A stretch of 64,000 bases of DNA. Source: Haplodiscus bocki. Its lineage: Eukaryota. Position 1 is the first letter of the stretch. Each line of letters begins with the position of its first letter. The DNA is taken from assembly GCA_965655095.1 (NCBI GenBank), contig OZ296658.1, forward strand, positions 71,548,001 through 71,612,000. Direction: 5' to 3'. The translations under genes were made by a program, and so were the position numbers. The notes below the pieces were generated by a model. It saw only the letters and a list, made by a program, of their open reading frames with translations. It did not search any database and had not been told where the DNA came from. This document shows positions 1 to 12,389 of this stretch, piece by piece.

Positions 1-1294
1 TCCCAGGGTTGCTATATTCAGGAGTTGTAGTCATTCTATCAGTTTTGTTAACACTGCTGAAATATTCACAAAACAAATTAGCTCGATCTTTATCATCCTC
101 AGCCCATTTCCTGTCATTCGGGATATCTCTGTAAATACGTGGAGATATTTCTTCACGTTTAAGTTGTCGAAAGTAGCGAAACATTTTGCTTGAGTTTTTG
201 GTAGCAAAAATAGTTTGCTGATATTCACACAGATCTTTGCATAATTCATCGGATAATGTGGCCTGTAGGCTACATTTTTTAATCAAAAGAGTGTTGCACG
301 GTTTAGTTTTCAGACGTTTGACAACTGTATTCAATTTTTTGATTAGATGTGATGCAGAACTGCTGACCCATGGTGCTAAGGACGAGCGATGCAATGTTCC
401 TACTGGCGTAACCTGTTCAATAAGTTGATATATCCAAGAGTAAAATTCTTCGATATTTTTGTCACAGTTACTATAACACTTAGGTACGAAAGGAGTTTCT
501 ATCATGAGAGAAGCGAAAGCATTAAAATCACATTTAGAGAAACTATACTCTTTCTTGTGATTGGTGATATTCTTGTAGTATTTATGATTGCTTTTAATGC
601 AAACACTAAATCGGATAGGATAGTGATTTGAGCTGGGACCGTTTGGCATGACAGAGTTGCATTCAATTATAGACTGGAAGATTTCAGGATCTTTGGTCAA
701 TATGAGATCAAGAATACTGCTTCTGGTGGTATTAAAGTTTACCATTTGAATATAGTTTCGTTGCTCAAATTCATTGATAAATAATCTTTCATATTCATCA
801 GCAGATTCATTGATATTCCAATTGGTTTTTAGAAGATTCATATCACCACCTAGTATATGGTAGTCAGTTTTGTGATTTTCTATAAAATTTAGAAGCGTGA
901 TCCACTCATTAATAGATGCTCGATATTTACTATTTGAGGGAGGGTTATAGACTACAATCAACGCAATTGAGCATGATCCAGCGTCAATAAGGACAAAAAC
1001 AGCTGATTGTCGCAGATAATCCGAAGTAAAAGGAATATTTGTGTGAGGAATATTTCTTTTGATAGCGATTGCTGATCCACCATGTAGGCTGACTCTTTTT
1101 CTTTTATTTTTTAAATTATCCGGTATATCTCTTTCTGCTCTGTAGATGGCATATTTTGGAAGGAAGAATTCAGCATCAGCAAAGTCGGTTGTTGTCCAGG
1201 TTTCGGTAAGCATGAGAATATCGAAATCTTCTCTTGCTGTTAGGTTTGATAACTGATGTCGTTTGTCAAGATTAATCAGACTTTGGCAGTTCAA
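1..1294 (-). CDS. LINE ORF2, partial (APE endonuclease and linker), cut by the window edge
   Basis: Matches 3618-4911; the only difference noticed is A175 vs G3792 (His->Tyr in FRHFRQ). Confidence 0.9.
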   Translation of the reverse strand, partial: MNCQSLINLDKRHQLSNLTAREDFDILMLTETWTTTDFADAEFFLPKYAIYRAERDIPDNLKNKRKRVSLHGGSAIAIKRNIPHTNIPFTSDYLRQSAVFVLIDAGSCSIALIVVYNPPSNSKYRASINEWITLLNFIENHKTDYHILGGDMNLLKTNWNINESADEYERLFINEFEQRNYIQMVNFNTTRSSILDLILTKDPEIFQSIIECNSVMPNGPSSNHYPIRFSVCIKSNHKYYKNITNHKKEYSFSKCDFNAFASLMIETPFVPKCYSNCDKNIEEFYSWIYQLIEQVTPVGTLHRSSLAPWVSSSASHLIKKLNTVVKRLKTKPCNTLLIKKCSLQATLSDELCKDLCEYQQTIFATKNSSKMFRYFRQLKREEISPRIYRDIPNDRKWAEDDKDRANLFCEYFSSVNKTDRMTTTPEYSNPG

Positions 1295-1318
1295 AAGAAA
1301 TACATCATACTGAAATAG

Positions 1319-1945
1319 TCAGTTTTTCTCAGGTAGCTGGTTTGTTGCAGAAACAGCTGCTTGGTTTTTCAGAATTGCATAATCAGATAGGTCAATTTCT
1401 TTGCCGTCAACAAAAAGTTTAAGATCTCTAATTTTGATTAAACTTCTTTCAGTGCCTTGGTTTAGCAGATCTCTGCGTATTTGCAGAATGCGATTTTCAT
1501 TCAGTTTTTCTTCTGGGGATAGCATCCTATTAATGAAAATTGGTTTGTGAAAGGTCTTCATTTTTGGAGCCTTTGATAAAATTTTCCGAACATCCCAAGC
1601 TGATGATAAGGTGAGTATAACTGCGCGCGGTCTTTCTTTATTTCTTACAAATTTTCCTAGGCGCTTTATGTCCATTATTTGCGGGGATTCTTCAAGGTGA
1701 GTTAAGACTTCATTTACAGCATCCATTTCATGATTCAATATCGCAGAAGCTCGATTTTCAGGCGAAACTTGCTCAACGTTTGCTTCAGCTAAATTGTCAA
1801 TTTTTAGTTGAAAAGGAGCATTTGGGGGTAACTTTTTGTCTTTTACAAGATCTGTTTCAATATCTTTTGGCTTATTTATTTCGCGCGCAGGCTCGAGTTC
1901 CGTCTTAATTTCAGTAAGAGAGTTTTGTACTGAATTCACCGAAAT
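1319..1945 (-). pseudogene. 5'-truncated LINE ORF1 lacking the PHD finger
   Basis: Same as the C-terminal 206 aa of ORF1 8553-9437. The ORF-finder start is an internal GTG (Val), preceded by the (AT)n tail of the adjacent copy. Confidence 0.9.
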
Positions 1946-1961
1946 ATATATATATATATAT
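1944..1961. repeat. (AT)9 3' tail of LINE copy / unit junction
   Basis: ...caccgaa-atatatatatatatatat-aaatgag; the full-length copy reads caccgaaat-tttcagc at 9171-9186. Confidence 0.9.
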
Positions 1962-2220
1962 AAATGAGTTCATTGATAACAGTTTCCGTTGTTGTTGTTC
2001 TTGAAATATCTGTCGAATCAGGCTTCAATAGTTTATGCATTCATGATCATCTGTCTTCTGTGGATGCTCCTACACGTTATACATAGGCAAACAAAGTGCC
2101 ATGAGCAGATGTTGTTTTCTTGATATTGTTCAACAAATTTTTTCACATTTGGGTAAGTAATTTCTTATTGATATTTTCATTGTCGGTGATGTTCAAGTGT
2201 TTGGAAAGGACATTAGCTCG

Positions 2221-4911
2221 TTAACAGGCACGATAAAAGAAATTGTCACGTAATAATTCACAGGATATTTGAGGTAAGTAGAACTGTATTTCATTTCGCC
2301 CATATTTCATAACAATATTGGAATCAAAATTTACATCATATTTGTGTGTAACAATACCCGATAACAGAATAATTTCTTTCATCTCCATGAAATATGTCAA
2401 AGGCAAAATTTGCAGGTGAGATAATCTGTCCTTGTAGGAATCTAAATAGCACATCCATTTGGTGATTTTCTTGTTGAAGGCCTCTAGAGCTCTGACATCC
2501 ATTCTTGATAAGGAATAACACTCTGATGCATAGAGAAGTTGGGGGATAATTGTACTCTTGTACAAGAGAAGTTTTGAATATTGCGAAATAGATTTGCTGA
2601 CATTTCTCTTCAACATCTGGAATGTTTTGTTTGCCTTTGCAAGCTTAGTTTCTATATGAGCAGTCCATTTGAGGTTGTTACTTACCACCAGACCCAGGTC
2701 AGTATTTCGAGTACACTCCGCAATTTCCTCAGAGTATATTTCAGGTGAAAAATTTAGCTGTCCCTTGAGCAAGAGATAGTGGCATTTCCTCGAGTTGAAA
2801 AGTAAAAAGCGGGTTTCACTCCAAATTTGCAAGCTCATGAAGTCGTTTTTGAGAAGAAATGATTGAGAGCAGGATCCGATATATAGACCAGATAGGTCGT
2901 CGGCAAAAAGATATGCATATAAATAGAGCAATTCATTTGGTAAGTCATCGATGTAGATAATGAAGCAAAGAAGACCAATAAGGGTACCTTGTGCTACACC
3001 GCAATTGATTTTTTCCACTTTTGAAGTGGCGTTATTGATTTTCACCATTATTTTCCTGTCTGTAATGTATGATGTAAGCAGTGAGTAAAATTTTGAGGAT
3101 AACCCAAGTCGCTGGAGCTTTTTCATCAGAATTACGTGGTCTATGCTATCAAAAGCTCGTTTAAAATCAAACAGGAAGAGCGCAATGCATTCAGATTTTG
3201 TCCATTTCTCATATATATGGGATAAAGTCTTCAGTAATCTTAGCACAGGTGATCGTTTCGCTCTAAAGCCATACTGTAAGTCGTTTGAATGTGGGGAATA
3301 CGTTGCTAACAGCTGGTTGTATACATTTGTTTCAAAAATTTTTGAAATGGTGTTCTGCAAGCTAATAGGGCGATAATTTTCAACAAATTTTTTATCACCT
3401 TTTTTGAATACGGGAACTACTAATGTAAGCTTCCACGTTTCTGGGTAAACTCCCAGACGGGCTACATTTCGATAGATGTTATACAATGGGTGTTGAATAG
3501 CATCTGCGGTGTTTTTGAACAATGCGACTTGAAGTTCATCACGACCTTTTGCTTTATTCACATTGAGTTTGTTTAATGTTTTATAGATTTCAGTCTTTGT
3601 GATCCTGATTGCTGTATTCCCAGGGTTGCTATATTCAGGAGTTGTAGTCATTCTATCAGTTTTGTTAACACTGCTGAAATATTCACAAAACAAATTAGCT
3701 CGATCTTTATCATCCTCAGCCCATTTCCTGTCATTCGGGATATCTCTGTAAATACGTGGAGATATTTCTTCACGTTTAAGTTGTCGAAAGTGGCGAAACA
3801 TTTTGCTTGAGTTTTTGGTAGCAAAAATAGTTTGCTGATATTCACACAGATCTTTGCATAATTCATCGGATAATGTGGCCTGTAGGCTACATTTTTTAAT
3901 CAAAAGAGTGTTGCACGGTTTAGTTTTCAGACGTTTGACAACTGTATTCAATTTTTTGATTAGATGTGATGCAGAACTGCTGACCCATGGTGCTAAGGAC
4001 GAGCGATGCAATGTTCCTACTGGCGTAACCTGTTCAATAAGTTGATATATCCAAGAGTAAAATTCTTCGATATTTTTGTCACAGTTACTATAACACTTAG
4101 GTACGAAAGGAGTTTCTATCATGAGAGAAGCGAAAGCATTAAAATCACATTTAGAGAAACTATACTCTTTCTTGTGATTGGTGATATTCTTGTAGTATTT
4201 ATGATTGCTTTTAATGCAAACACTAAATCGGATAGGATAGTGATTTGAGCTGGGACCGTTTGGCATGACAGAGTTGCATTCAATTATAGACTGGAAGATT
4301 TCAGGATCTTTGGTCAATATGAGATCAAGAATACTGCTTCTGGTGGTATTAAAGTTTACCATTTGAATATAGTTTCGTTGCTCAAATTCATTGATAAATA
4401 ATCTTTCATATTCATCAGCAGATTCATTGATATTCCAATTGGTTTTTAGAAGATTCATATCACCACCTAGTATATGGTAGTCAGTTTTGTGATTTTCTAT
4501 AAAATTTAGAAGCGTGATCCACTCATTAATAGATGCTCGATATTTACTATTTGAGGGAGGGTTATAGACTACAATCAACGCAATTGAGCATGATCCAGCG
4601 TCAATAAGGACAAAAACAGCTGATTGTCGCAGATAATCCGAAGTAAAAGGAATATTTGTGTGAGGAATATTTCTTTTGATAGCGATTGCTGATCCACCAT
4701 GTAGGCTGACTCTTTTTCTTTTATTTTTTAAATTATCCGGTATATCTCTTTCTGCTCTGTAGATGGCATATTTTGGAAGGAAGAATTCAGCATCAGCAAA
4801 GTCGGTTGTTGTCCAGGTTTCGGTAAGCATGAGAATATCGAAATCTTCTCTTGCTGTTAGGTTTGATAACTGATGTCGTTTGTCAAGATTAATCAGACTT
4901 TGGCAGTTCAA
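2221..4911 (-). CDS. LINE ORF2: APE endonuclease + reverse transcriptase (896 aa, prematurely terminated)
   Basis: APE motifs NCQSL, LTETW, YNPP, GDMN, LDLIL, SNHYP. RT motifs NYRPISL, QYGFR, DFKRAFDSIDH, GVAQG, FADD, DLG..W..HI. The coding remnant continues past the stop to 2033. Confidence 0.95.
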   Translation of the reverse strand: MNCQSLINLDKRHQLSNLTAREDFDILMLTETWTTTDFADAEFFLPKYAIYRAERDIPDNLKNKRKRVSLHGGSAIAIKRNIPHTNIPFTSDYLRQSAVFVLIDAGSCSIALIVVYNPPSNSKYRASINEWITLLNFIENHKTDYHILGGDMNLLKTNWNINESADEYERLFINEFEQRNYIQMVNFNTTRSSILDLILTKDPEIFQSIIECNSVMPNGPSSNHYPIRFSVCIKSNHKYYKNITNHKKEYSFSKCDFNAFASLMIETPFVPKCYSNCDKNIEEFYSWIYQLIEQVTPVGTLHRSSLAPWVSSSASHLIKKLNTVVKRLKTKPCNTLLIKKCSLQATLSDELCKDLCEYQQTIFATKNSSKMFRHFRQLKREEISPRIYRDIPNDRKWAEDDKDRANLFCEYFSSVNKTDRMTTTPEYSNPGNTAIRITKTEIYKTLNKLNVNKAKGRDELQVALFKNTADAIQHPLYNIYRNVARLGVYPETWKLTLVVPVFKKGDKKFVENYRPISLQNTISKIFETNVYNQLLATYSPHSNDLQYGFRAKRSPVLRLLKTLSHIYEKWTKSECIALFLFDFKRAFDSIDHVILMKKLQRLGLSSKFYSLLTSYITDRKIMVKINNATSKVEKINCGVAQGTLIGLLCFIIYIDDLPNELLYLYAYLFADDLSGLYIGSCSQSFLLKNDFMSLQIWSETRFLLFNSRKCHYLLLKGQLNFSPEIYSEEIAECTRNTDLGLVVSNNLKWTAHIETKLAKANKTFQMLKRNVSKSISQYSKLLLYKSTIIPQLLYASECYSLSRMDVRALEAFNKKITKWMCYLDSYKDRLSHLQILPLTYFMEMKEIILLSGIVTHKYDVNFDSNIVMKYGRNEIQFYLPQISCELLRDNFFYRAC

Positions 4912-4935
4912 AAGAAATACATCATACTGAAATAG

Positions 4936-5562
4936 TCAGTTTTTCTCAGGTAGCTGGTTTGTTGCAGAAACAGCTGCTTGGTTTTTCAGAATTGCATAAT
5001 CAGATAGGTCAATTTCTTTGCCGTCAACAAAAAGTTTAAGATCTCTAATTTTGATTAAACTTCTTTCAGTGCCTTGGTTTAGCAGATCTCTGCGTATTTG
5101 CAGAATGCGATTTTCATTCAGTTTTTCTTCTGGGGATAGCATCCTATTAATGAAAATTGGTTTGTGAAAGGTCTTCATTTTTGGAGCCTTTGATAAAATT
5201 TTCCGAACATCCCAAGCTGATGATAAGGTGAGTATAACTGCGCGCGGTCTTTCTTTATTTCTTACAAATTTTCCTAGGCGCTTTATGTCCATTATTTGCG
5301 GGGATTCTTCAAGGTGAGTTAAGACTTCATTTACAGCATCCATTTCATGATTCAATATCGCAGAAGCTCGATTTTCAGGCGAAACTTGCTCAACGTTTGC
5401 TTCAGCTAAATTGTCAATTTTTAGTTGAAAAGGAGCATTTGGGGGTAACTTTTTGTCTTTTACAAGATCTGTTTCAATATCTTTTGGCTTATTTATTTCG
5501 CGCGCAGGCTCGAGTTCCGTCTTAATTTCAGTAAGAGAGTTTTGTACTGAATTCACCGAAAT
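4936..5562 (-). pseudogene. 5'-truncated LINE ORF1 lacking the PHD finger
   Basis: Same truncation point as 1319-1945. Confidence 0.9.
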
Positions 5563-5578
5563 ATATATATATATATAT
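5561..5578. repeat. (AT)9 3' tail of LINE copy / unit junction
   Basis: Same length and junction as 1944-1961. Confidence 0.9.
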
Positions 5579-5837
5579 AAATGAGTTCATTGATAACAGT
5601 TTCCGTTGTTGTTGTTCTTGAAATATCTGTCGAATCAGGCTTCAATAGTTTATGCATTCATGATCATCTGTCTTCTGTGGATGCTCCTACACGTTATACA
5701 TAGGCAAACAAAGTGCCATGAGCAGATGTTGTTTTCTTGATATTGTTCAACAAATTTTTTCACATTTGGGTAAGTAATTTCTTATTGATATTTTCATTGT
5801 CGGTGATGTTCAAGTGTTTGGAAAGGACATTAGCTCG

Positions 5838-8528
5838 TTAACAGGCACGATAAAAGAAATTGTCACGTAATAATTCACAGGATATTTGAGGTAAGTAGAA
5901 CTGTATTTCATTTCGCCCATATTTCATAACAATATTGGAATCAAAATTTACATCATATTTGTGTGTAACAATACCCGATAACAGAATAATTTCTTTCATC
6001 TCCATGAAATATGTCAAAGGCAAAATTTGCAGGTGAGATAATCTGTCCTTGTAGGAATCTAAATAGCACATCCATTTGGTGATTTTCTTGTTGAAGGCCT
6101 CTAGAGCTCTGACATCCATTCTTGATAAGGAATAACACTCTGATGCATAGAGAAGTTGGGGGATAATTGTACTCTTGTACAAGAGAAGTTTTGAATATTG
6201 CGAAATAGATTTGCTGACATTTCTCTTCAACATCTGGAATGTTTTGTTTGCCTTTGCAAGCTTAGTTTCTATATGAGCAGTCCATTTGAGGTTGTTACTT
6301 ACCACCAGACCCAGGTCAGTATTTCGAGTACACTCCGCAATTTCCTCAGAGTATATTTCAGGTGAAAAATTTAGCTGTCCCTTGAGCAAGAGATAGTGGC
6401 ATTTCCTCGAGTTGAAAAGTAAAAAGCGGGTTTCACTCCAAATTTGCAAGCTCATGAAGTCGTTTTTGAGAAGAAATGATTGAGAGCAGGATCCGATATA
6501 TAGACCAGATAGGTCGTCGGCAAAAAGATATGCATATAAATAGAGCAATTCATTTGGTAAGTCATCGATGTAGATAATGAAGCAAAGAAGACCAATAAGG
6601 GTACCTTGTGCTACACCGCAATTGATTTTTTCCACTTTTGAAGTGGCGTTATTGATTTTCACCATTATTTTCCTGTCTGTAATGTATGATGTAAGCAGTG
6701 AGTAAAATTTTGAGGATAACCCAAGTCGCTGGAGCTTTTTCATCAGAATTACGTGGTCTATGCTATCAAAAGCTCGTTTAAAATCAAACAGGAAGAGCGC
6801 AATGCATTCAGATTTTGTCCATTTCTCATATATATGGGATAAAGTCTTCAGTAATCTTAGCACAGGTGATCGTTTCGCTCTAAAGCCATACTGTAAGTCG
6901 TTTGAATGTGGGGAATACGTTGCTAACAGCTGGTTGTATACATTTGTTTCAAAAATTTTTGAAATGGTGTTCTGCAAGCTAATAGGGCGATAATTTTCAA
7001 CAAATTTTTTATCACCTTTTTTGAATACGGGAACTACTAATGTAAGCTTCCACGTTTCTGGGTAAACTCCCAGACGGGCTACATTTCGATAGATGTTATA
7101 CAATGGGTGTTGAATAGCATCTGCGGTGTTTTTGAACAATGCGACTTGAAGTTCATCACGACCTTTTGCTTTATTCACATTGAGTTTGTTTAATGTTTTA
7201 TAGATTTCAGTCTTTGTGATCCTGATTGCTGTATTCCCAGGGTTGCTATATTCAGGAGTTGTAGTCATTCTATCAGTTTTGTTAACACTGCTGAAATATT
7301 CACAAAACAAATTAGCTCGATCTTTATCATCCTCAGCCCATTTCCTGTCATTCGGGATATCTCTGTAAATACGTGGAGATATTTCTTCACGTTTAAGTTG
7401 TCGAAAGTGGCGAAACATTTTGCTTGAGTTTTTGGTAGCAAAAATAGTTTGCTGATATTCACACAGATCTTTGCATAATTCATCGGATAATGTGGCCTGT
7501 AGGCTACATTTTTTAATCAAAAGAGTGTTGCACGGTTTAGTTTTCAGACGTTTGACAACTGTATTCAATTTTTTGATTAGATGTGATGCAGAACTGCTGA
7601 CCCATGGTGCTAAGGACGAGCGATGCAATGTTCCTACTGGCGTAACCTGTTCAATAAGTTGATATATCCAAGAGTAAAATTCTTCGATATTTTTGTCACA
7701 GTTACTATAACACTTAGGTACGAAAGGAGTTTCTATCATGAGAGAAGCGAAAGCATTAAAATCACATTTAGAGAAACTATACTCTTTCTTGTGATTGGTG
7801 ATATTCTTGTAGTATTTATGATTGCTTTTAATGCAAACACTAAATCGGATAGGATAGTGATTTGAGCTGGGACCGTTTGGCATGACAGAGTTGCATTCAA
7901 TTATAGACTGGAAGATTTCAGGATCTTTGGTCAATATGAGATCAAGAATACTGCTTCTGGTGGTATTAAAGTTTACCATTTGAATATAGTTTCGTTGCTC
8001 AAATTCATTGATAAATAATCTTTCATATTCATCAGCAGATTCATTGATATTCCAATTGGTTTTTAGAAGATTCATATCACCACCTAGTATATGGTAGTCA
8101 GTTTTGTGATTTTCTATAAAATTTAGAAGCGTGATCCACTCATTAATAGATGCTCGATATTTACTATTTGAGGGAGGGTTATAGACTACAATCAACGCAA
8201 TTGAGCATGATCCAGCGTCAATAAGGACAAAAACAGCTGATTGTCGCAGATAATCCGAAGTAAAAGGAATATTTGTGTGAGGAATATTTCTTTTGATAGC
8301 GATTGCTGATCCACCATGTAGGCTGACTCTTTTTCTTTTATTTTTTAAATTATCCGGTATATCTCTTTCTGCTCTGTAGATGGCATATTTTGGAAGGAAG
8401 AATTCAGCATCAGCAAAGTCGGTTGTTGTCCAGGTTTCGGTAAGCATGAGAATATCGAAATCTTCTCTTGCTGTTAGGTTTGATAACTGATGTCGTTTGT
8501 CAAGATTAATCAGACTTTGGCAGTTCAA
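5838..8528 (-). CDS. LINE ORF2: APE endonuclease + reverse transcriptase (896 aa, prematurely terminated)
   Basis: Translation matches 2221-4911. Confidence 0.95.
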   Translation of the reverse strand: MNCQSLINLDKRHQLSNLTAREDFDILMLTETWTTTDFADAEFFLPKYAIYRAERDIPDNLKNKRKRVSLHGGSAIAIKRNIPHTNIPFTSDYLRQSAVFVLIDAGSCSIALIVVYNPPSNSKYRASINEWITLLNFIENHKTDYHILGGDMNLLKTNWNINESADEYERLFINEFEQRNYIQMVNFNTTRSSILDLILTKDPEIFQSIIECNSVMPNGPSSNHYPIRFSVCIKSNHKYYKNITNHKKEYSFSKCDFNAFASLMIETPFVPKCYSNCDKNIEEFYSWIYQLIEQVTPVGTLHRSSLAPWVSSSASHLIKKLNTVVKRLKTKPCNTLLIKKCSLQATLSDELCKDLCEYQQTIFATKNSSKMFRHFRQLKREEISPRIYRDIPNDRKWAEDDKDRANLFCEYFSSVNKTDRMTTTPEYSNPGNTAIRITKTEIYKTLNKLNVNKAKGRDELQVALFKNTADAIQHPLYNIYRNVARLGVYPETWKLTLVVPVFKKGDKKFVENYRPISLQNTISKIFETNVYNQLLATYSPHSNDLQYGFRAKRSPVLRLLKTLSHIYEKWTKSECIALFLFDFKRAFDSIDHVILMKKLQRLGLSSKFYSLLTSYITDRKIMVKINNATSKVEKINCGVAQGTLIGLLCFIIYIDDLPNELLYLYAYLFADDLSGLYIGSCSQSFLLKNDFMSLQIWSETRFLLFNSRKCHYLLLKGQLNFSPEIYSEEIAECTRNTDLGLVVSNNLKWTAHIETKLAKANKTFQMLKRNVSKSISQYSKLLLYKSTIIPQLLYASECYSLSRMDVRALEAFNKKITKWMCYLDSYKDRLSHLQILPLTYFMEMKEIILLSGIVTHKYDVNFDSNIVMKYGRNEIQFYLPQISCELLRDNFFYRAC

Positions 8529-8552
8529 AAGAAATACATCATACTGAAATAG

Positions 8553-9437
8553 TCAGTTTTTCTCAGGTAGCTGGTTTGTTGCAGAAACAGCTGCTTGGTT
8601 TTTCAGAATTGCATAATCAGATAGGTCAATTTCTTTGCCGTCAACAAAAAGTTTAAGATCTCTAATTTTGATTAAACTTCTTTCAGTGCCTTGGTTTAGC
8701 AGATCTCTGCGTATTTGCAGAATGCGATTTTCATTCAGTTTTTCTTCTGGGGATAGCATCCTATTAATGAAAATTGGTTTGTGAAAGGTCTTCATTTTTG
8801 GAGCCTTTGATAAAATTTTCCGAACATCCCAAGCTGATGATAAGGTGAGTATAACTGCGCGCGGTCTTTCTTTATTTCTTACAAATTTTCCTAGGCGCTT
8901 TATGTCCATTATTTGCGGGGATTCTTCAAGGTGAGTTAAGACTTCATTTACAGCATCCATTTCATGATTCAATATCGCAGAAGCTCGATTTTCAGGCGAA
9001 ACTTGCTCAACGTTTGCTTCAGCTAAATTGTCAATTTTTAGTTGAAAAGGAGCATTTGGGGGTAACTTTTTGTCTTTTACAAGATCTGTTTCAATATCTT
9101 TTGGCTTATTTATTTCGCGCGCAGGCTCGAGTTCCGTCTTAATTTCAGTAAGAGAGTTTTGTACTGAATTCACCGAAATTTTCAGCTCTTTGATAGCAAG
9201 TAAGGAATTGGACTTAGCTTCGGATTTGAAGGCATCATTGTCTCTGCAAGAGCTACAGATCCAGAGACAACCACTAACTCTGCCCATCACAGTGACATCT
9301 CCTTGAGAGAGCCCAGCACATGAACATCCATGATACCAGACACTACAATTGTCACAGGCAATGCCAGAGGGGTCGCCATCTTTCACCACTCTTTTGCAAG
9401 ATCCACATTTCGACGTCGAAGTTGATGTTTTTGACAT
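8553..9437 (-). CDS. LINE ORF1, full length (294 aa): PHD finger, coiled coil, RRM/CTD-like region
   Basis: ATG start. CGSC..CDNC..WYHGCSC..WICSSC PHD pattern. RLGK..RPRAVIL and IFINRMLSPEE resemble CR1/L2 ORF1 C-terminal motifs. Confidence 0.9.
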   Translation of the reverse strand: MSKTSTSTSKCGSCKRVVKDGDPSGIACDNCSVWYHGCSCAGLSQGDVTVMGRVSGCLWICSSCRDNDAFKSEAKSNSLLAIKELKISVNSVQNSLTEIKTELEPAREINKPKDIETDLVKDKKLPPNAPFQLKIDNLAEANVEQVSPENRASAILNHEMDAVNEVLTHLEESPQIMDIKRLGKFVRNKERPRAVILTLSSAWDVRKILSKAPKMKTFHKPIFINRMLSPEEKLNENRILQIRRDLLNQGTERSLIKIRDLKLFVDGKEIDLSDYAILKNQAAVSATNQLPEKN

Positions 9438-12389
9438 TTCAATCGGAAACTATTTGATAAGTTTATCACAACAATTCGACTCTTTGGAAGAGTCGACAAG
9501 TTCTAAGGTAACCTTTTTTAAACAACTTTCATAATATCCATGAGAAAAGTTCGCACGAAGTCGAAACTTACATCAAAACTCACTGCTGTACATATTGTTT
9601 GAGTTGTTTCCTAACTCATGTGATATTCATCACTTTGAGGCATGCTGAACGCGTTAAACATTAGGTACTGTGGAATTCTTGTGAAAAGGCCTCTTTCGGA
9701 AATTTTTCAGCCAAAACCTTGGTGATAAATCAGAAAAATATCTGCATAAAACTGAATGCAACTAACGCTTCATTTTGCATCGCCTACCCAGCATTACTAT
9801 GTCATACATGGGATATTAGGCCAGAGAAATGCGACAAAGTCACTCTTGCCCATCGAAAAGATCTGGGTTTGCAATCGTTTCCGACAAAAAACTCGCCGGC
9901 GAAAAATTTTCGTACAACGAAAATTTTGGGCCCGGTCAATGACGAAGTGGTCAATGCACTTTAGCCAGAAATTAAGTTATCCTCCGATTGCGTTTGTAGA
10001 AAATGAACCTCAAAGTTAAGAAACGAAGTTGGCAATGGGAAGTGTCAAACCTCTTTCGAGAAAGTTGAGAATTTACGGCTTTTTTTGACGAAAACTACTC
10101 GACTTTTTTGGCAAAAACTGTCCCAGCACGCCGCTTAACTGAATAGTATCCCATCAATTTGTGCAAAAGCATTGCCCTTTCAAGTGTTACTCTGAAGAAA
10201 GGACTCAAAATTAAACCCTTTTGCCCTATAAAAACATTAGAAATTCGAAGTTTTTTGGTAATAAGTCGCCAAAAAAAGTTTCGACGGATCAAAATTTCGA
10301 ATACGAAAGATAGTAAAACCGACGTAGTGTTGATAAAAGAATCAGTCAAATGCCGCCAATAATTGCCGAAAAATTTAGATTTGAAGAGATGAAACGCAGA
10401 ATAACGGCGCGGTCGGGAAAAGGAAACCATTTTGACGCTTTTGTGCAAATAGGCTTCTTTCCGCTCGCCTAAAATTTCGACAAGCCTCATGGTTTTGCCT
10501 AGGAGGTTTTAGGTAAATGAAATCAGTAAGTTTTGTCGGCAAAGTTGACGTAAATATGGATTGAGCTCAACGTTGTTGCATCGTCGATTTTCTCAACTTT
10601 CGACGTTTTCTTGGTGTTTGTGACGCAATGCCAAACTTCGCGGTTGCGTGATTTTTGATTTTCAGTTTGCGAGAACGTTCACCAGGTCTGGTTGTCGGAG
10701 TGCTTGTGGAAAAAGTTTTAGTTGACCGTCCTTGAGAAGCAGGTGGGCCGGATTGACTGCTGTTTCTGTAATTGGTGAATGTTGAAGTCGGCGTTGACGC
10801 TAGTGGGGTTGTTTTTTTTGGGAGTAGCCAAGTGTCGAAGCAGGTGTGATCGGAGTTGTGGATGTCCCCGTCGCAAGTGTTGCTGCTACAGGTGTTGGAC
10901 ATGGTGATGGGAGGTTGACACCCGAAGAAGGAGTTGCAGTGGGAGTCGAAAACTGATGAGGTGTTGGTAAAGATGGCCACTCGGTGCACTAACTTTGATG
11001 GAGACTATTTTAAGGAGTGGGAGATCCACCTGGTCGATTTCGAGTTGGTACATTGGAGGTTGGAGCTGCAATTTGAGAATTTCTTTCTCTGATTGGGACG
11101 TTCGTAGACGGATGCTTCCTTTGAAGCGGTATCAAGTTGCCGTAATGCATGACGGATTCTTTCCAGTGCCGACTTCTTTTGTTTGATAATTCACGTCTTT
11201 CAAACATTTCAGTGTGGTGTGAGGACTACGCCTTGTGCTGCAAACTCGGGACTTTGGCCAAACGGTATCACTGGCGTATGTAAGAGCAATTCTTGTCCAT
11301 CTATGTGGAGCCAAGTAGCTTGTGAATGTCTATGGCGGTACGGCGTCGCTGACTCGTGTGACATTGGTCAGGTGCTCGCTGGAATGCTTGTTTCTTCTAA
11401 TGGACAAAATCATGGACATTGGTTGGATAATCCGTTTCCTGGTTGGGGAACATGAGATCCAAAGGTTTCTCGACCGTGCACCAAGAGTTCTGGGGCGTGT
11501 CCTGTGGATTCTTGTTCAGACGAACGATGTGCCATTATCACGTAAGGGAGCTGTTGAGACTAGTTGTTTTGCTTTGCGTTTATGCACTGTGCAATCATGT
11601 TTTAGAGGGCGCGGCTCACGCTCAATGACTGCATTGGACTGAAGGTGAAATGCTGTCGCACGAGATCTCAAGAAGAGACATTGGGTTCTGGAAGAGTCGA
11701 GATTCAAAACTGCTTCGGTCACTGGATTCTATGGGGATGACCGAAACGACTAATCCATTGCTCTATCAGTTCAGTGGCGGTTGTTGATGCTTGCTGGTCA
11801 GGCAGTGGTGTAGCTTCATACCATTTGGTGTAGTGGCGGCCATTCTAGAGGATTACTTTGTGTCCGTTGGATTGCTGTAACGGTCCCATGAAATCAATAC
11901 GATTGTGGTGGAAGTGATTGCTAGCTTCCCAATCCACAATAGCATGGCTGTATGTTTTTGGGGGGTTACTTCGTTTCTGACATTGGCGACAACGACTGAT
12001 GAAATGTTTCACATCTTCTTTCTTGATGAAAACCGGGCCAATAAAGTCTTTGCGTGAATTTTTCGGTAACCTTAGTTACACCTAAGTGTCGTCCAGATGA
12101 AGAAGAGTGAATGGATCCCACCAGATCTTCTACCAAGCTCTGAAAAACTCTTTCATGGAGGAATTGAACGCGACCGTCCGTGTCTTTTAAGGTTGCCGTA
12201 GACTACCTTGGAGGTCATTGTTTTTAGGTAGACGTGACTGTCGAAGCAGCCTTTGACCAGCTCATATGATTCGTCTCCATCTTGCACAATTCGGATGTTT
12301 TTGGTGAGCTAGGGGTCTACAAGGTCAGTCCCGCTGTTATCTGATGCTTTTTCTAACTCCGTTGAGTTGGACGTATACAACGTGAGGCG

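What the first reader, a model, noticed from the sequence alone, without database searches (positions are those of the whole stretch)
1..9590. Near-identical head-to-tail LINE concatemer with one repeated 5'-truncation junction
Seen: one full-length copy is followed, in element orientation, by copies that start at exactly the same base inside ORF1 (equivalent to 9179). Each is fused to an identical (AT)9 tail through a 2-bp AT microhomology, with no spacer or TSD. The period is exactly 3617 bp. Established: independent TPRT insertions give variable truncations and tail lengths. Inference: the junction formed once and was then amplified. Possible routes are self-insertion into ORF1 with homology-guided 5' joining, microhomology-mediated duplication followed by unequal crossover, or rolling-circle copying of a circular DNA/RNA. 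This would be a LINE turning into a macrosatellite. An assembly artefact is also possible.
Basis: partly seen in the sequence, partly recalled or inferred. Interest (0 to 1): 0.72.

Follow-up and report, generated by a model that had tools for sequence, protein, structure and literature searches.

The report
Recent in-place tandem copying of LINE
An old, resident jumping gene (a LINE) in a coral genome has recently been copied head to tail about three times at one spot, most likely by DNA breakage and recombination at its AT-repeat tail rather than by new jumps; this is a clean early-stage example of a known way that mobile elements become tandem repeats.

Summary
On the minus strand, a full-length APE+RT LINE (window 9480 to 5563) is followed by units that all restart at the same ORF1 base (equivalent to 9179). 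Each restart follows an (AT)n tract, and the period is 3617 bp.

The array continues left of the window. It has a third junction, (AT)8, with the same restart base, and it ends in a 625-bp partial unit joined to (AT)11.

The whole 11.8-kb block sits between one 5-bp target-site duplication (TCTTT) inside an older repeat, so this is a single insertion locus.

Three facts point away from repeated retrotransposition:
- All units lack the 36-nt 3' end that 25 of 25 other readable family copies carry.
- All units share 23 private substitutions with a neutral pattern. These are found nowhere else in the 1.5-Gb genome.
- The units differ from each other by one base and one AT repeat.

The most likely history is that an aged resident copy was recently rearranged at its (AT)n tail. 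One junction formed, then expanded by unequal recombination.

An RT template-switch origin and an assembly error are not excluded. The read evidence was uninformative.

This is a known kind of event (tail-to-internal non-LTR tandems, PMC5932611). Earlier notes of this scan record other LINE-derived arrays in the same genome.

The parts
1..1945 (-). Right-hand 1945 bp of truncated unit T2. The unit continues left of the window to L032:8331 (C11:71546331). It carries the only inter-unit substitution, at window 175.
1944..1961 (.). (AT)9 tract at junction J2. Its first AT overlaps the ORF1 restart base of T2.
1946..5562 (-). Truncated unit T1 (3617 bp). It holds the (AT) tract, the 3'UTR without the canonical 36-nt end, an intact ORF2 (2221-4911) and ORF1 from the restart base to its stop.
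5561..5578 (.). (AT)9 tract at junction J1
5563..9480 (-). Full-length resident LINE copy, with the 5' end at about 9474-9480 including a few extra bases. Like the other units, it lacks the family's canonical 36-nt 3' end.
5838..8528 (-). ORF2, 896 codons, with an AP-endonuclease domain and a reverse transcriptase domain
8553..9437 (-). ORF1, 294 aa, with a weak PHD-like zinc finger at its N-terminus. It is in frame with ORF2 across a single UGA.
9179..9180 (-). Breakpoint X in ORF1. The truncated units start at the base equivalent to 9179.
8555..8555 (-). Equivalent of breakpoint Y, the first base of the ORF1 stop codon. The leftmost partial unit (outside the window, L032:7706-8330) ends here against (AT)11.
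9481..9485 (.). Right copy of the 5-bp target-site duplication TCTTT. The left copy is at L032:7679-7683, directly before (AT)11.
9481..10000 (.). Older high-copy interspersed repeat that hosts the insertion. Its other half is L032:7100-7683. Paralogous copies show the uninterrupted site.

Best explanation
A single full-length LINE inserted long ago by ordinary TPRT into an older repeat, leaving the TSD TCTTT and an (AT)n tail. It then decayed neutrally, like its siblings. Much later the locus was rearranged at the DNA level, with every breakpoint lying on an (AT)n tract.

Proposed steps:
1. The 36-nt 3' end next to the tail was lost.
2. A break or stalled fork in the self-complementary (AT)n tail was repaired by copying 625 bp of ORF1 (Y back to X) from the same element. 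The copy rejoined the tail through AT microhomology. This created one tail-to-ORF1 junction and a 625-bp direct repeat 3 kb apart.
3. Unequal sister-chromatid or homologous exchange between these repeats, and then between whole 3.6-kb units, raised the count to the present state: one full-length copy, two units and one partial unit.

Shown: the anatomy, the single TSD, the shared private variants and the missing 3' end. Inferred: that the process acted on DNA, the order of steps, and the repair pathway.
For: - Single locus. One 5-bp TSD brackets the whole 11,797-bp block, and paralogs of the host repeat show the empty site.
- One junction, three times. The same ORF1 base is used each time, and each of the three unusual junction types (tail-to-ORF1, 3'-deleted UTR next to the tract, and the Y|(AT)11 end) exists only here in the 1.5-Gb genome.
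- Not canonical retrotransposition products. All 25 other readable copies keep an invariant 36-nt 3' end before (AT)n, and every array unit lacks it.
- Old template, young copies. The array sequence has 23 substitutions seen in no other sampled copy (0.60% of 3819 sites). This lies within the singleton load of other copies (0.2-1.4%).
- The private changes split 13 nonsynonymous, 5 synonymous and 5 noncoding, which is a neutral pattern.
- Short sequences containing these private variants hit only the array, 4 and 3 times.
- The units differ from each other by 1 substitution, a derived singleton, and one AT repeat.
- The 625-bp partial unit is identical to the full-length copy. About 7.5 differences would be expected had both existed since the insertion.
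- DNA-level tandem duplication affects this family elsewhere. A 1803-bp duplication on C8 includes 645 bp of non-LINE flank.
- The 3' flanks of L072 and L073 are identical, as are the 5' flanks of L019 and L020. This shows a 12.4-kb duplication on C4.
- Expanded TA repeats form cruciforms that provoke breaks (PMC13669725 abstract; PMC1851657).
- Tail-to-internal non-LTR tandems that expand by unequal exchange are documented (PMC5932611).
Against: - No read-level confirmation. Only Logan contigs were available, and the tool skipped both (AT) tracts.
- The founding event needs two or three breakpoints, all on (AT)n. The Y junction has at most 1 nt of microhomology.
- Y coincides with the ORF1 stop codon, which a DNA-repair model leaves to chance.
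- The 'aged resident copy' argument assumes the 23 private variants arose in place. A lost or unassembled diverged source would void it.
- A 625-bp templated insertion is long for end-joining repair.
- No intermediate (n = 0 or 1) allele was seen.
Confidence: 0.6

Rival explanations
1. RT-mediated origin. In one aberrant TPRT event the family's reverse transcriptase made (AT)n, engaged the RNA internally at Y, copied to X, then jumped to a new (AU)n or 3' region and copied on. It did this either once (a founding dimer later expanded by unequal crossover) or serially, as end-to-end template jumping or rolling reverse transcription of a 3617-nt template.
For: - An (AT)n tract sits at every novel joint, as expected if the RT lays down (AT)n at each initiation. 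Tails in the family vary from (AT)4 to more than (AT)30.
- A single TSD surrounds everything.
- There is AT microhomology at X.
- R2-type RTs make head-to-tail products by template jumping (PMC11371274).
Against: - The units carry 23 private, neutral-pattern variants with no source copy in the genome.
- All units lack the 36-nt 3' end conserved in 25 of 25 other readable copies. An RNA from this copy should therefore be a poor template.
- If the partial unit dated from the original insertion, it should have diverged from the full-length copy. It is 625/625 identical.
- Serial jumps would need the same two switch points three times.
- None of the 25 other readable copies shows internal initiation.
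Confidence: 0.2
2. Double insertion. A second, 5'-truncated copy inserted by TPRT into the (AT)n tail of the first (McGurk-Barbash route). Tail-adjacent deletions and unequal exchange followed.
For: - This is the commonest documented route to tail-to-internal non-LTR tandems (PMC5932611).
- Flanks after the tails of this family usually start with A-rich sequence, so an AT tract is a plausible nick site.
- A TSD made of AT repeats would be invisible.
Against: - It needs a donor with the same 23 private variants (none found), or mobilisation of a copy that lacks the 3' recognition end.
- It needs two separate deletions, each ending exactly at a body/tract boundary, plus homogenisation.
- There are zero differences between the units.
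Confidence: 0.08
3. Assembly artefact. The junction, or at least the copy number, is not real.
For: - Near-perfect unit identity.
- No spanning read could be examined.
- At the array's private sites, the public contigs laid on the region all show the family-consensus base. However, contigs drop minority variants.
Against: - Three different novel junction types, a unit-specific SNP and an (AT)8 versus (AT)9 difference are resolved without any N.
- Assemblers tend to collapse such repeats rather than invent them.
- Both ends of the array are anchored in a TSD-bounded site.
Confidence: 0.08
4. A 3617-bp extrachromosomal circle (DNA or cDNA) was amplified by rolling-circle replication and re-integrated into the resident element.
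For: The period is exact and a single junction is repeated. Rolling-circle replication is one of the proposed routes to TE tandems (PMC5932611 introduction).
Against: - The left end is not a homologous join. It is a Y|(AT)11 junction lying directly on the original TSD.
- No evidence of a circle is available.
Confidence: 0.04

Closest known systems
Tail-to-internal tandems of non-LTR retrotransposons that expand by unequal exchange (Drosophila; McGurk & Barbash 2018, PMC5932611)
   Same: The 3' end or tail of one element is joined to a 5'-truncated neighbour. One junction is then multiplied, as an early step from TE to satellite.
   Different: In Drosophila the dimers are attributed to two independent insertions. 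Here the units share the resident copy's private mutations and all lack the family's 3' end. One TSD encloses everything, and the array ends in a 625-bp partial unit joined to the original tail. This points to DNA rearrangement rather than a second insertion.
R1 tandem array on the D. melanogaster X chromosome (as described in PMC5932611)
   Same: A LINE array with an identical junction in every unit, explained as one founding dimer plus unequal exchange.
   Different: R1 units are separated by a 33-nt duplication of the rDNA target. Here only an (AT)8-9 tract lies between units, and there is no target sequence.
Head-to-tail arrays of telomeric LINEs (HeT-A/TART/TAHRE)
   Same: Same-orientation LINE chains with tail-to-internal junctions.
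   Different: Those arise from successive TPRT onto chromosome ends, with variable truncations. This array is 20 Mb from the end of a 91.8-Mb contig, has a TSD and has identical junctions.
End-to-end template jumping by R2-type RT, and head-to-tail transgene repeats in PRINT (PMC11371274)
   Same: Could give concatemers with identical joints in a single event.
   Different: That work is in vitro or with an engineered R2. Here the template would lack the family's conserved 3' end, and the copies reproduce an aged genomic copy.
Other LINE-derived tandem arrays noted by this scan in the same genome (s1-359373, s1-382648)
   Same: Same genome. Pieces of LINEs were copied head to tail in place.
   Different: Those have 25-47 copies of 1.4-1.7-kb internal pieces of dead LINEs. 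This one has about 3 units that still hold intact ORF2s, and a unit boundary on the element's own tail.

Membership tests
APE-type LINE (non-LTR retrotransposon) | ORF2 with an AP-endonuclease domain followed by a reverse transcriptase domain | tested here: met
   Pfam hits: Exo_endo_phos 9e-9, Exo_endo_phos_2 1e-9, RVT_1 1e-21
APE-type LINE (non-LTR retrotransposon) | Dispersed copies with a fixed 3' end, a variable tail, variable 5' truncation and a short TSD | tested here: met
   25 copies have the same 36-nt 3' end followed by (AT)4 to more than (AT)30. Six copies have different 5' truncations. A 5-bp TSD is present at this locus.
APE-type LINE (non-LTR retrotransposon) | Assignment to a named clade (CR1/L2-like is suggested by the PHD-like ORF1 and the microsatellite tail) | not tested
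   No RT phylogeny was run. The PHD hit is below Pfam's cut-off (16.9 against 24 bits). The clade label rests on my own knowledge only.
TE tandem formed by double insertion (McGurk-Barbash type) | The second unit is an independent transposition product, with its own intact 3' end and a target duplication or distinct truncation between units | tested here: not met
   All units lack the canonical 3' end. The truncation is identical three times. There is no target sequence between units. The private variants are shared and no donor exists elsewhere.
Tandem array amplified from one founding junction by unequal exchange | Identical junction in every unit, and units far more alike than family members are to one another | tested here: met
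   Three junctions use the same ORF1 base. There is 1 substitution across about 11.5 kb of units, against 1.1-2.8% divergence from other copies.
Tandem array amplified from one founding junction by unequal exchange | Copy-number polymorphism by whole units among individuals | not testable with these tools
Telomeric retrotransposon array | Terminal location and variable truncation from successive end-additions | tested here: not met
   The array lies at 71.5 Mb of a 91.8-Mb contig. It is bounded by a TSD and has identical junctions.
Penelope-like element partial tandem (pseudo-LTR) | RT with a GIY-YIG endonuclease and a single ORF | tested here: not met
   The element has an AP endonuclease and two ORFs. 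No GIY-YIG hit was found.

The most novel reading that the evidence does not exclude
The array was written in one event by the LINE's own reverse transcriptase. The RT would have used a transcript of this resident copy, or a 3617-nt circular or end-defined RNA, and made serial template jumps that each began with de novo (AT)n synthesis. That would be natural, in vivo concatemer synthesis by a LINE RT.
Probability: 0.1. Interest if true: 0.7.

Novelty: new member of a known kind. Interest (0 to 1): 0.3.

Why it matters
This locus captures the earliest stage of a TE-to-tandem-repeat transition. The founder copy, the target-site duplication, the founding junction and the partial end unit are all still readable. 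It shows that the element's own self-complementary (AT)n tail is the breakpoint of every rearrangement.

The locus offers a concrete place to measure how fast such arrays grow among coral individuals. It also allows a test of whether microsatellite-tailed LINEs are predisposed to seed macrosatellites.

It does not reveal a new mechanism. Three intact ORF2 copies in tandem are a curiosity rather than a demonstrated function.

Tried and rejected
- Tandem Repeats Finder found nothing because its longest period is 500.
- Read support was sought in 4 public runs. All were Logan contigs, the tool skipped both (AT) tracts, and no listed contig bridged a junction. The result is uninformative.
- The look-up of encoding contigs was tried with the array's exact ORF2 to find other assemblies.
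- A scan of metagenome contigs for the junction was empty. The family's canonical 3' end is also absent from that collection, so the blank means nothing.
- Folding of the canonical 3' end, to see whether the missing 36 nt form a skip-prone hairpin, gave only a 4-bp stem. The energy was no better than shuffled sequence (z = 0.6), so no support.
It was rebuilt from loci already held.
- Rejected: (AT)n-microsatellite-targeted insertion. The 5' flanks of other copies are not (AT)n.
- Rejected: Penelope-like pseudo-LTR.
- Rejected: a subfamily with the short 3' end or with an ORF1-only form. Neither junction occurs elsewhere.
- The big protein searches were not used, because the domain content was already clear.
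- N-masked stretches next to two other copies (L059, L064) were left alone.
Full report
**What is there**

The window is G000:C11:71548001-71612000 of a 1.5-Gb genome. Public runs that hold the flanking sequence are labelled as coral or coral-reef samples.

Window 1-5562 is identical to 3618-9179 at a shift of exactly 3617 bp, apart from one base (175 A against G).

The element lies on the minus strand:
- ORF1 (9437-8553) has 294 aa and a weak PHD-like finger.
- ORF2 (8528-5838) has 896 codons with AP-endonuclease and RT domains.
- The two ORFs are in one frame, separated by a single UGA. Another note of this scan, s1-376477, says the same.

**Full extent of the array**

I fetched the 18 kb to the left of the window. 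In element orientation the order is:
1. Right flank.
2. Full-length copy (window 9480 to 5563).
3. (AT)9.
4. Unit T1 (5562 to 1946).
5. (AT)9.
6. Unit T2 (1945 to L032:8331).
7. (AT)8.
8. Partial unit T3, only 625 bp (L032:8330 to 7706).
9. (AT)11.
10. Left flank.

All three truncated units begin at the base equivalent to window 9179. T3 stops at the first base of the ORF1 stop codon.

**Boundaries and target site**

About 20 other full-length copies begin 25-30 bp upstream of the ORF1 ATG. The full-length copy therefore ends at about window 9480, not 9590.

Both flanks belong to one older repeat with thousands of copies. In paralogs that contain both halves (L042, L043, L046), the left and right flank alignments overlap by 5 bp. 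The intact site reads ...AAAAGTCTTTGGAAGAG....

At our locus TCTTT stands directly before (AT)11 on the left and directly after the element's 5' end on the right. The entire 11,797-bp block is therefore one TSD-bounded insertion locus.

**The family**

This young subfamily has roughly 40-46 copies (46 first-look candidates). They are 96-99% identical to the array.

Among the 27 other loci examined (plus four 3' ends):
- All 25 readable 3' ends share an invariant 36-nt terminal segment followed by (AT)n. The tract ranges from 4 to more than 30 repeats, with one (ATAG)-mixed tail.
- Six copies are 5'-truncated, each at a different position.
- No copy is followed directly by family sequence.

Every array unit lacks the 36-nt end, and the 3'UTR runs straight into the tract.

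Whole-genome pattern searches find three junction types only at this locus:
- the 3'-deleted UTR next to the tract;
- the tract joined to ORF1;
- the Y|(AT)11 end.

**Age argument**

I compared the array with all sampled copies site by site.

- The array has 23 substitutions that no other copy shows, out of 3819 sites covered by at least 8 copies (0.60%).
- Independent copies carry 0.2-1.4% singletons, so the array lineage is as decayed as a typical family member.
- The 23 changes split 13 nonsynonymous, 5 synonymous and 5 noncoding. This is what neutral decay gives, not what an actively selected master lineage gives.
- Short sequences spanning the private pairs occur 4 times (full-length copy, T1, T2, T3) and 3 times (full-length copy, T1, T2), and nowhere else in the genome. 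No donor copy is present.
- The units differ among themselves by one derived substitution and one AT repeat.

If the private changes arose in place, the copying happened in roughly the last 1-2% of the element's residence time. T3 cannot date from the original insertion: about 7.5 differences would be expected over 625 bp, and none is seen (inference).

**Mechanism**

These facts fit a recent DNA-level rearrangement of an old resident copy better than new retrotransposition.

All breakpoints lie on (AT)n. This tract is self-complementary, and expanded TA repeats are known to extrude cruciforms and break (PMC13669725; PMC1851657).

The minimal founding structure is the full-length copy, then (AT)9, then the segment X+1 to Y, then (AT)11. 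It can arise from a break in a tail of about 20 repeats, repaired by copying 625 bp from 3 kb away and rejoining through AT microhomology.

The resulting 625-bp direct repeat is a ready substrate for unequal exchange, which yields exactly the observed series of identical units ending in a partial one. Loss of the 36 nt is a further tail-adjacent deletion of unknown date.

The same family shows an unambiguous DNA-level tandem duplication elsewhere. On C8, a 1803-bp unit includes 645 bp of non-LINE flank, with 12 mismatches in 1819 bp. There is also a 12.4-kb duplication on C4.

Earlier notes of this scan report two larger LINE-derived arrays in this genome. I did not check them.

**Rivals**

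- An RT template-switch origin explains why an (AT)n tract sits at each joint and why one TSD encloses everything. LINE-type RTs do jump between templates (PMC11371274). However, it needs a template that lacks the family's conserved 3' end, and a source with the private variants that is not in the assembly.
- Double insertion into the tail (PMC5932611) needs the same missing donor plus two precise deletions.
- A rolling-circle product does not explain the left end.
- Misassembly cannot be excluded. The only public data were contigs, the tool skipped the (AT) tracts, and no contig bridged a junction. Three novel junction types, a unit-specific SNP and a tract-length difference argue against it.

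**Unexplained**

- Breakpoint Y coincides with the ORF1 stop codon.
- The Y junction shows almost no microhomology.
- When the 36 nt were lost is unknown.

**Comparison and verdict**

This is a new example of a documented route from TE to tandem repeat: tail-to-internal non-LTR tandems and their expansion (PMC5932611). It is caught very early, with all landmarks intact, and has the twist that the founding junction looks like DNA repair at the element's own AT tail rather than a second insertion.

Interest is modest.

**Tools unavailable or exhausted**

- Both metagenome scans were blank, and blank for the family as a whole.

Noticed in passing
window 8520-8560: ORF1 and ORF2 of the LINE are in the same frame, separated only by one UGA (…EKN*LFQ…). 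ORF2 has no ATG until codon 28. The leftmost partial unit of the array ends exactly on the first base of this stop codon.
   Followed up: partly
L080/L069 (G000:C8:91042738-91047842): The same LINE family has a 1803-bp tandem duplication. Its unit is 645 bp of non-LINE flank, plus the tail, plus the last 1.13 kb of the element. There are 12 mismatches in 1819 bp, so it is older than the array studied here.
   Followed up: yes
L019/L020 and L072/L073 (G000:C4:105041819-105057788): Two full-length copies 12,367 bp apart have identical 5' and 3' flanks. This is a 12.4-kb segmental tandem duplication that carries the element.
   Followed up: partly
L067 (G000:C9:31305631-31308932): The long (AT)n tail of one copy is followed at once by the reverse complement of the family's 5' end. 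This is a tail-to-head inverted pair of elements.
   Followed up: no
L032:7100-7683 and window 9481-10000: The host of the insertion is an old interspersed repeat. It has more than 3000 first-look candidates in the genome at 74-80% identity. It was not classified.
   Followed up: no
L084/L030 (G000:C8:13176276-13179647): One copy has a tail of mixed (ATAG)n and (AT)n units instead of pure (AT)n.
   Followed up: no
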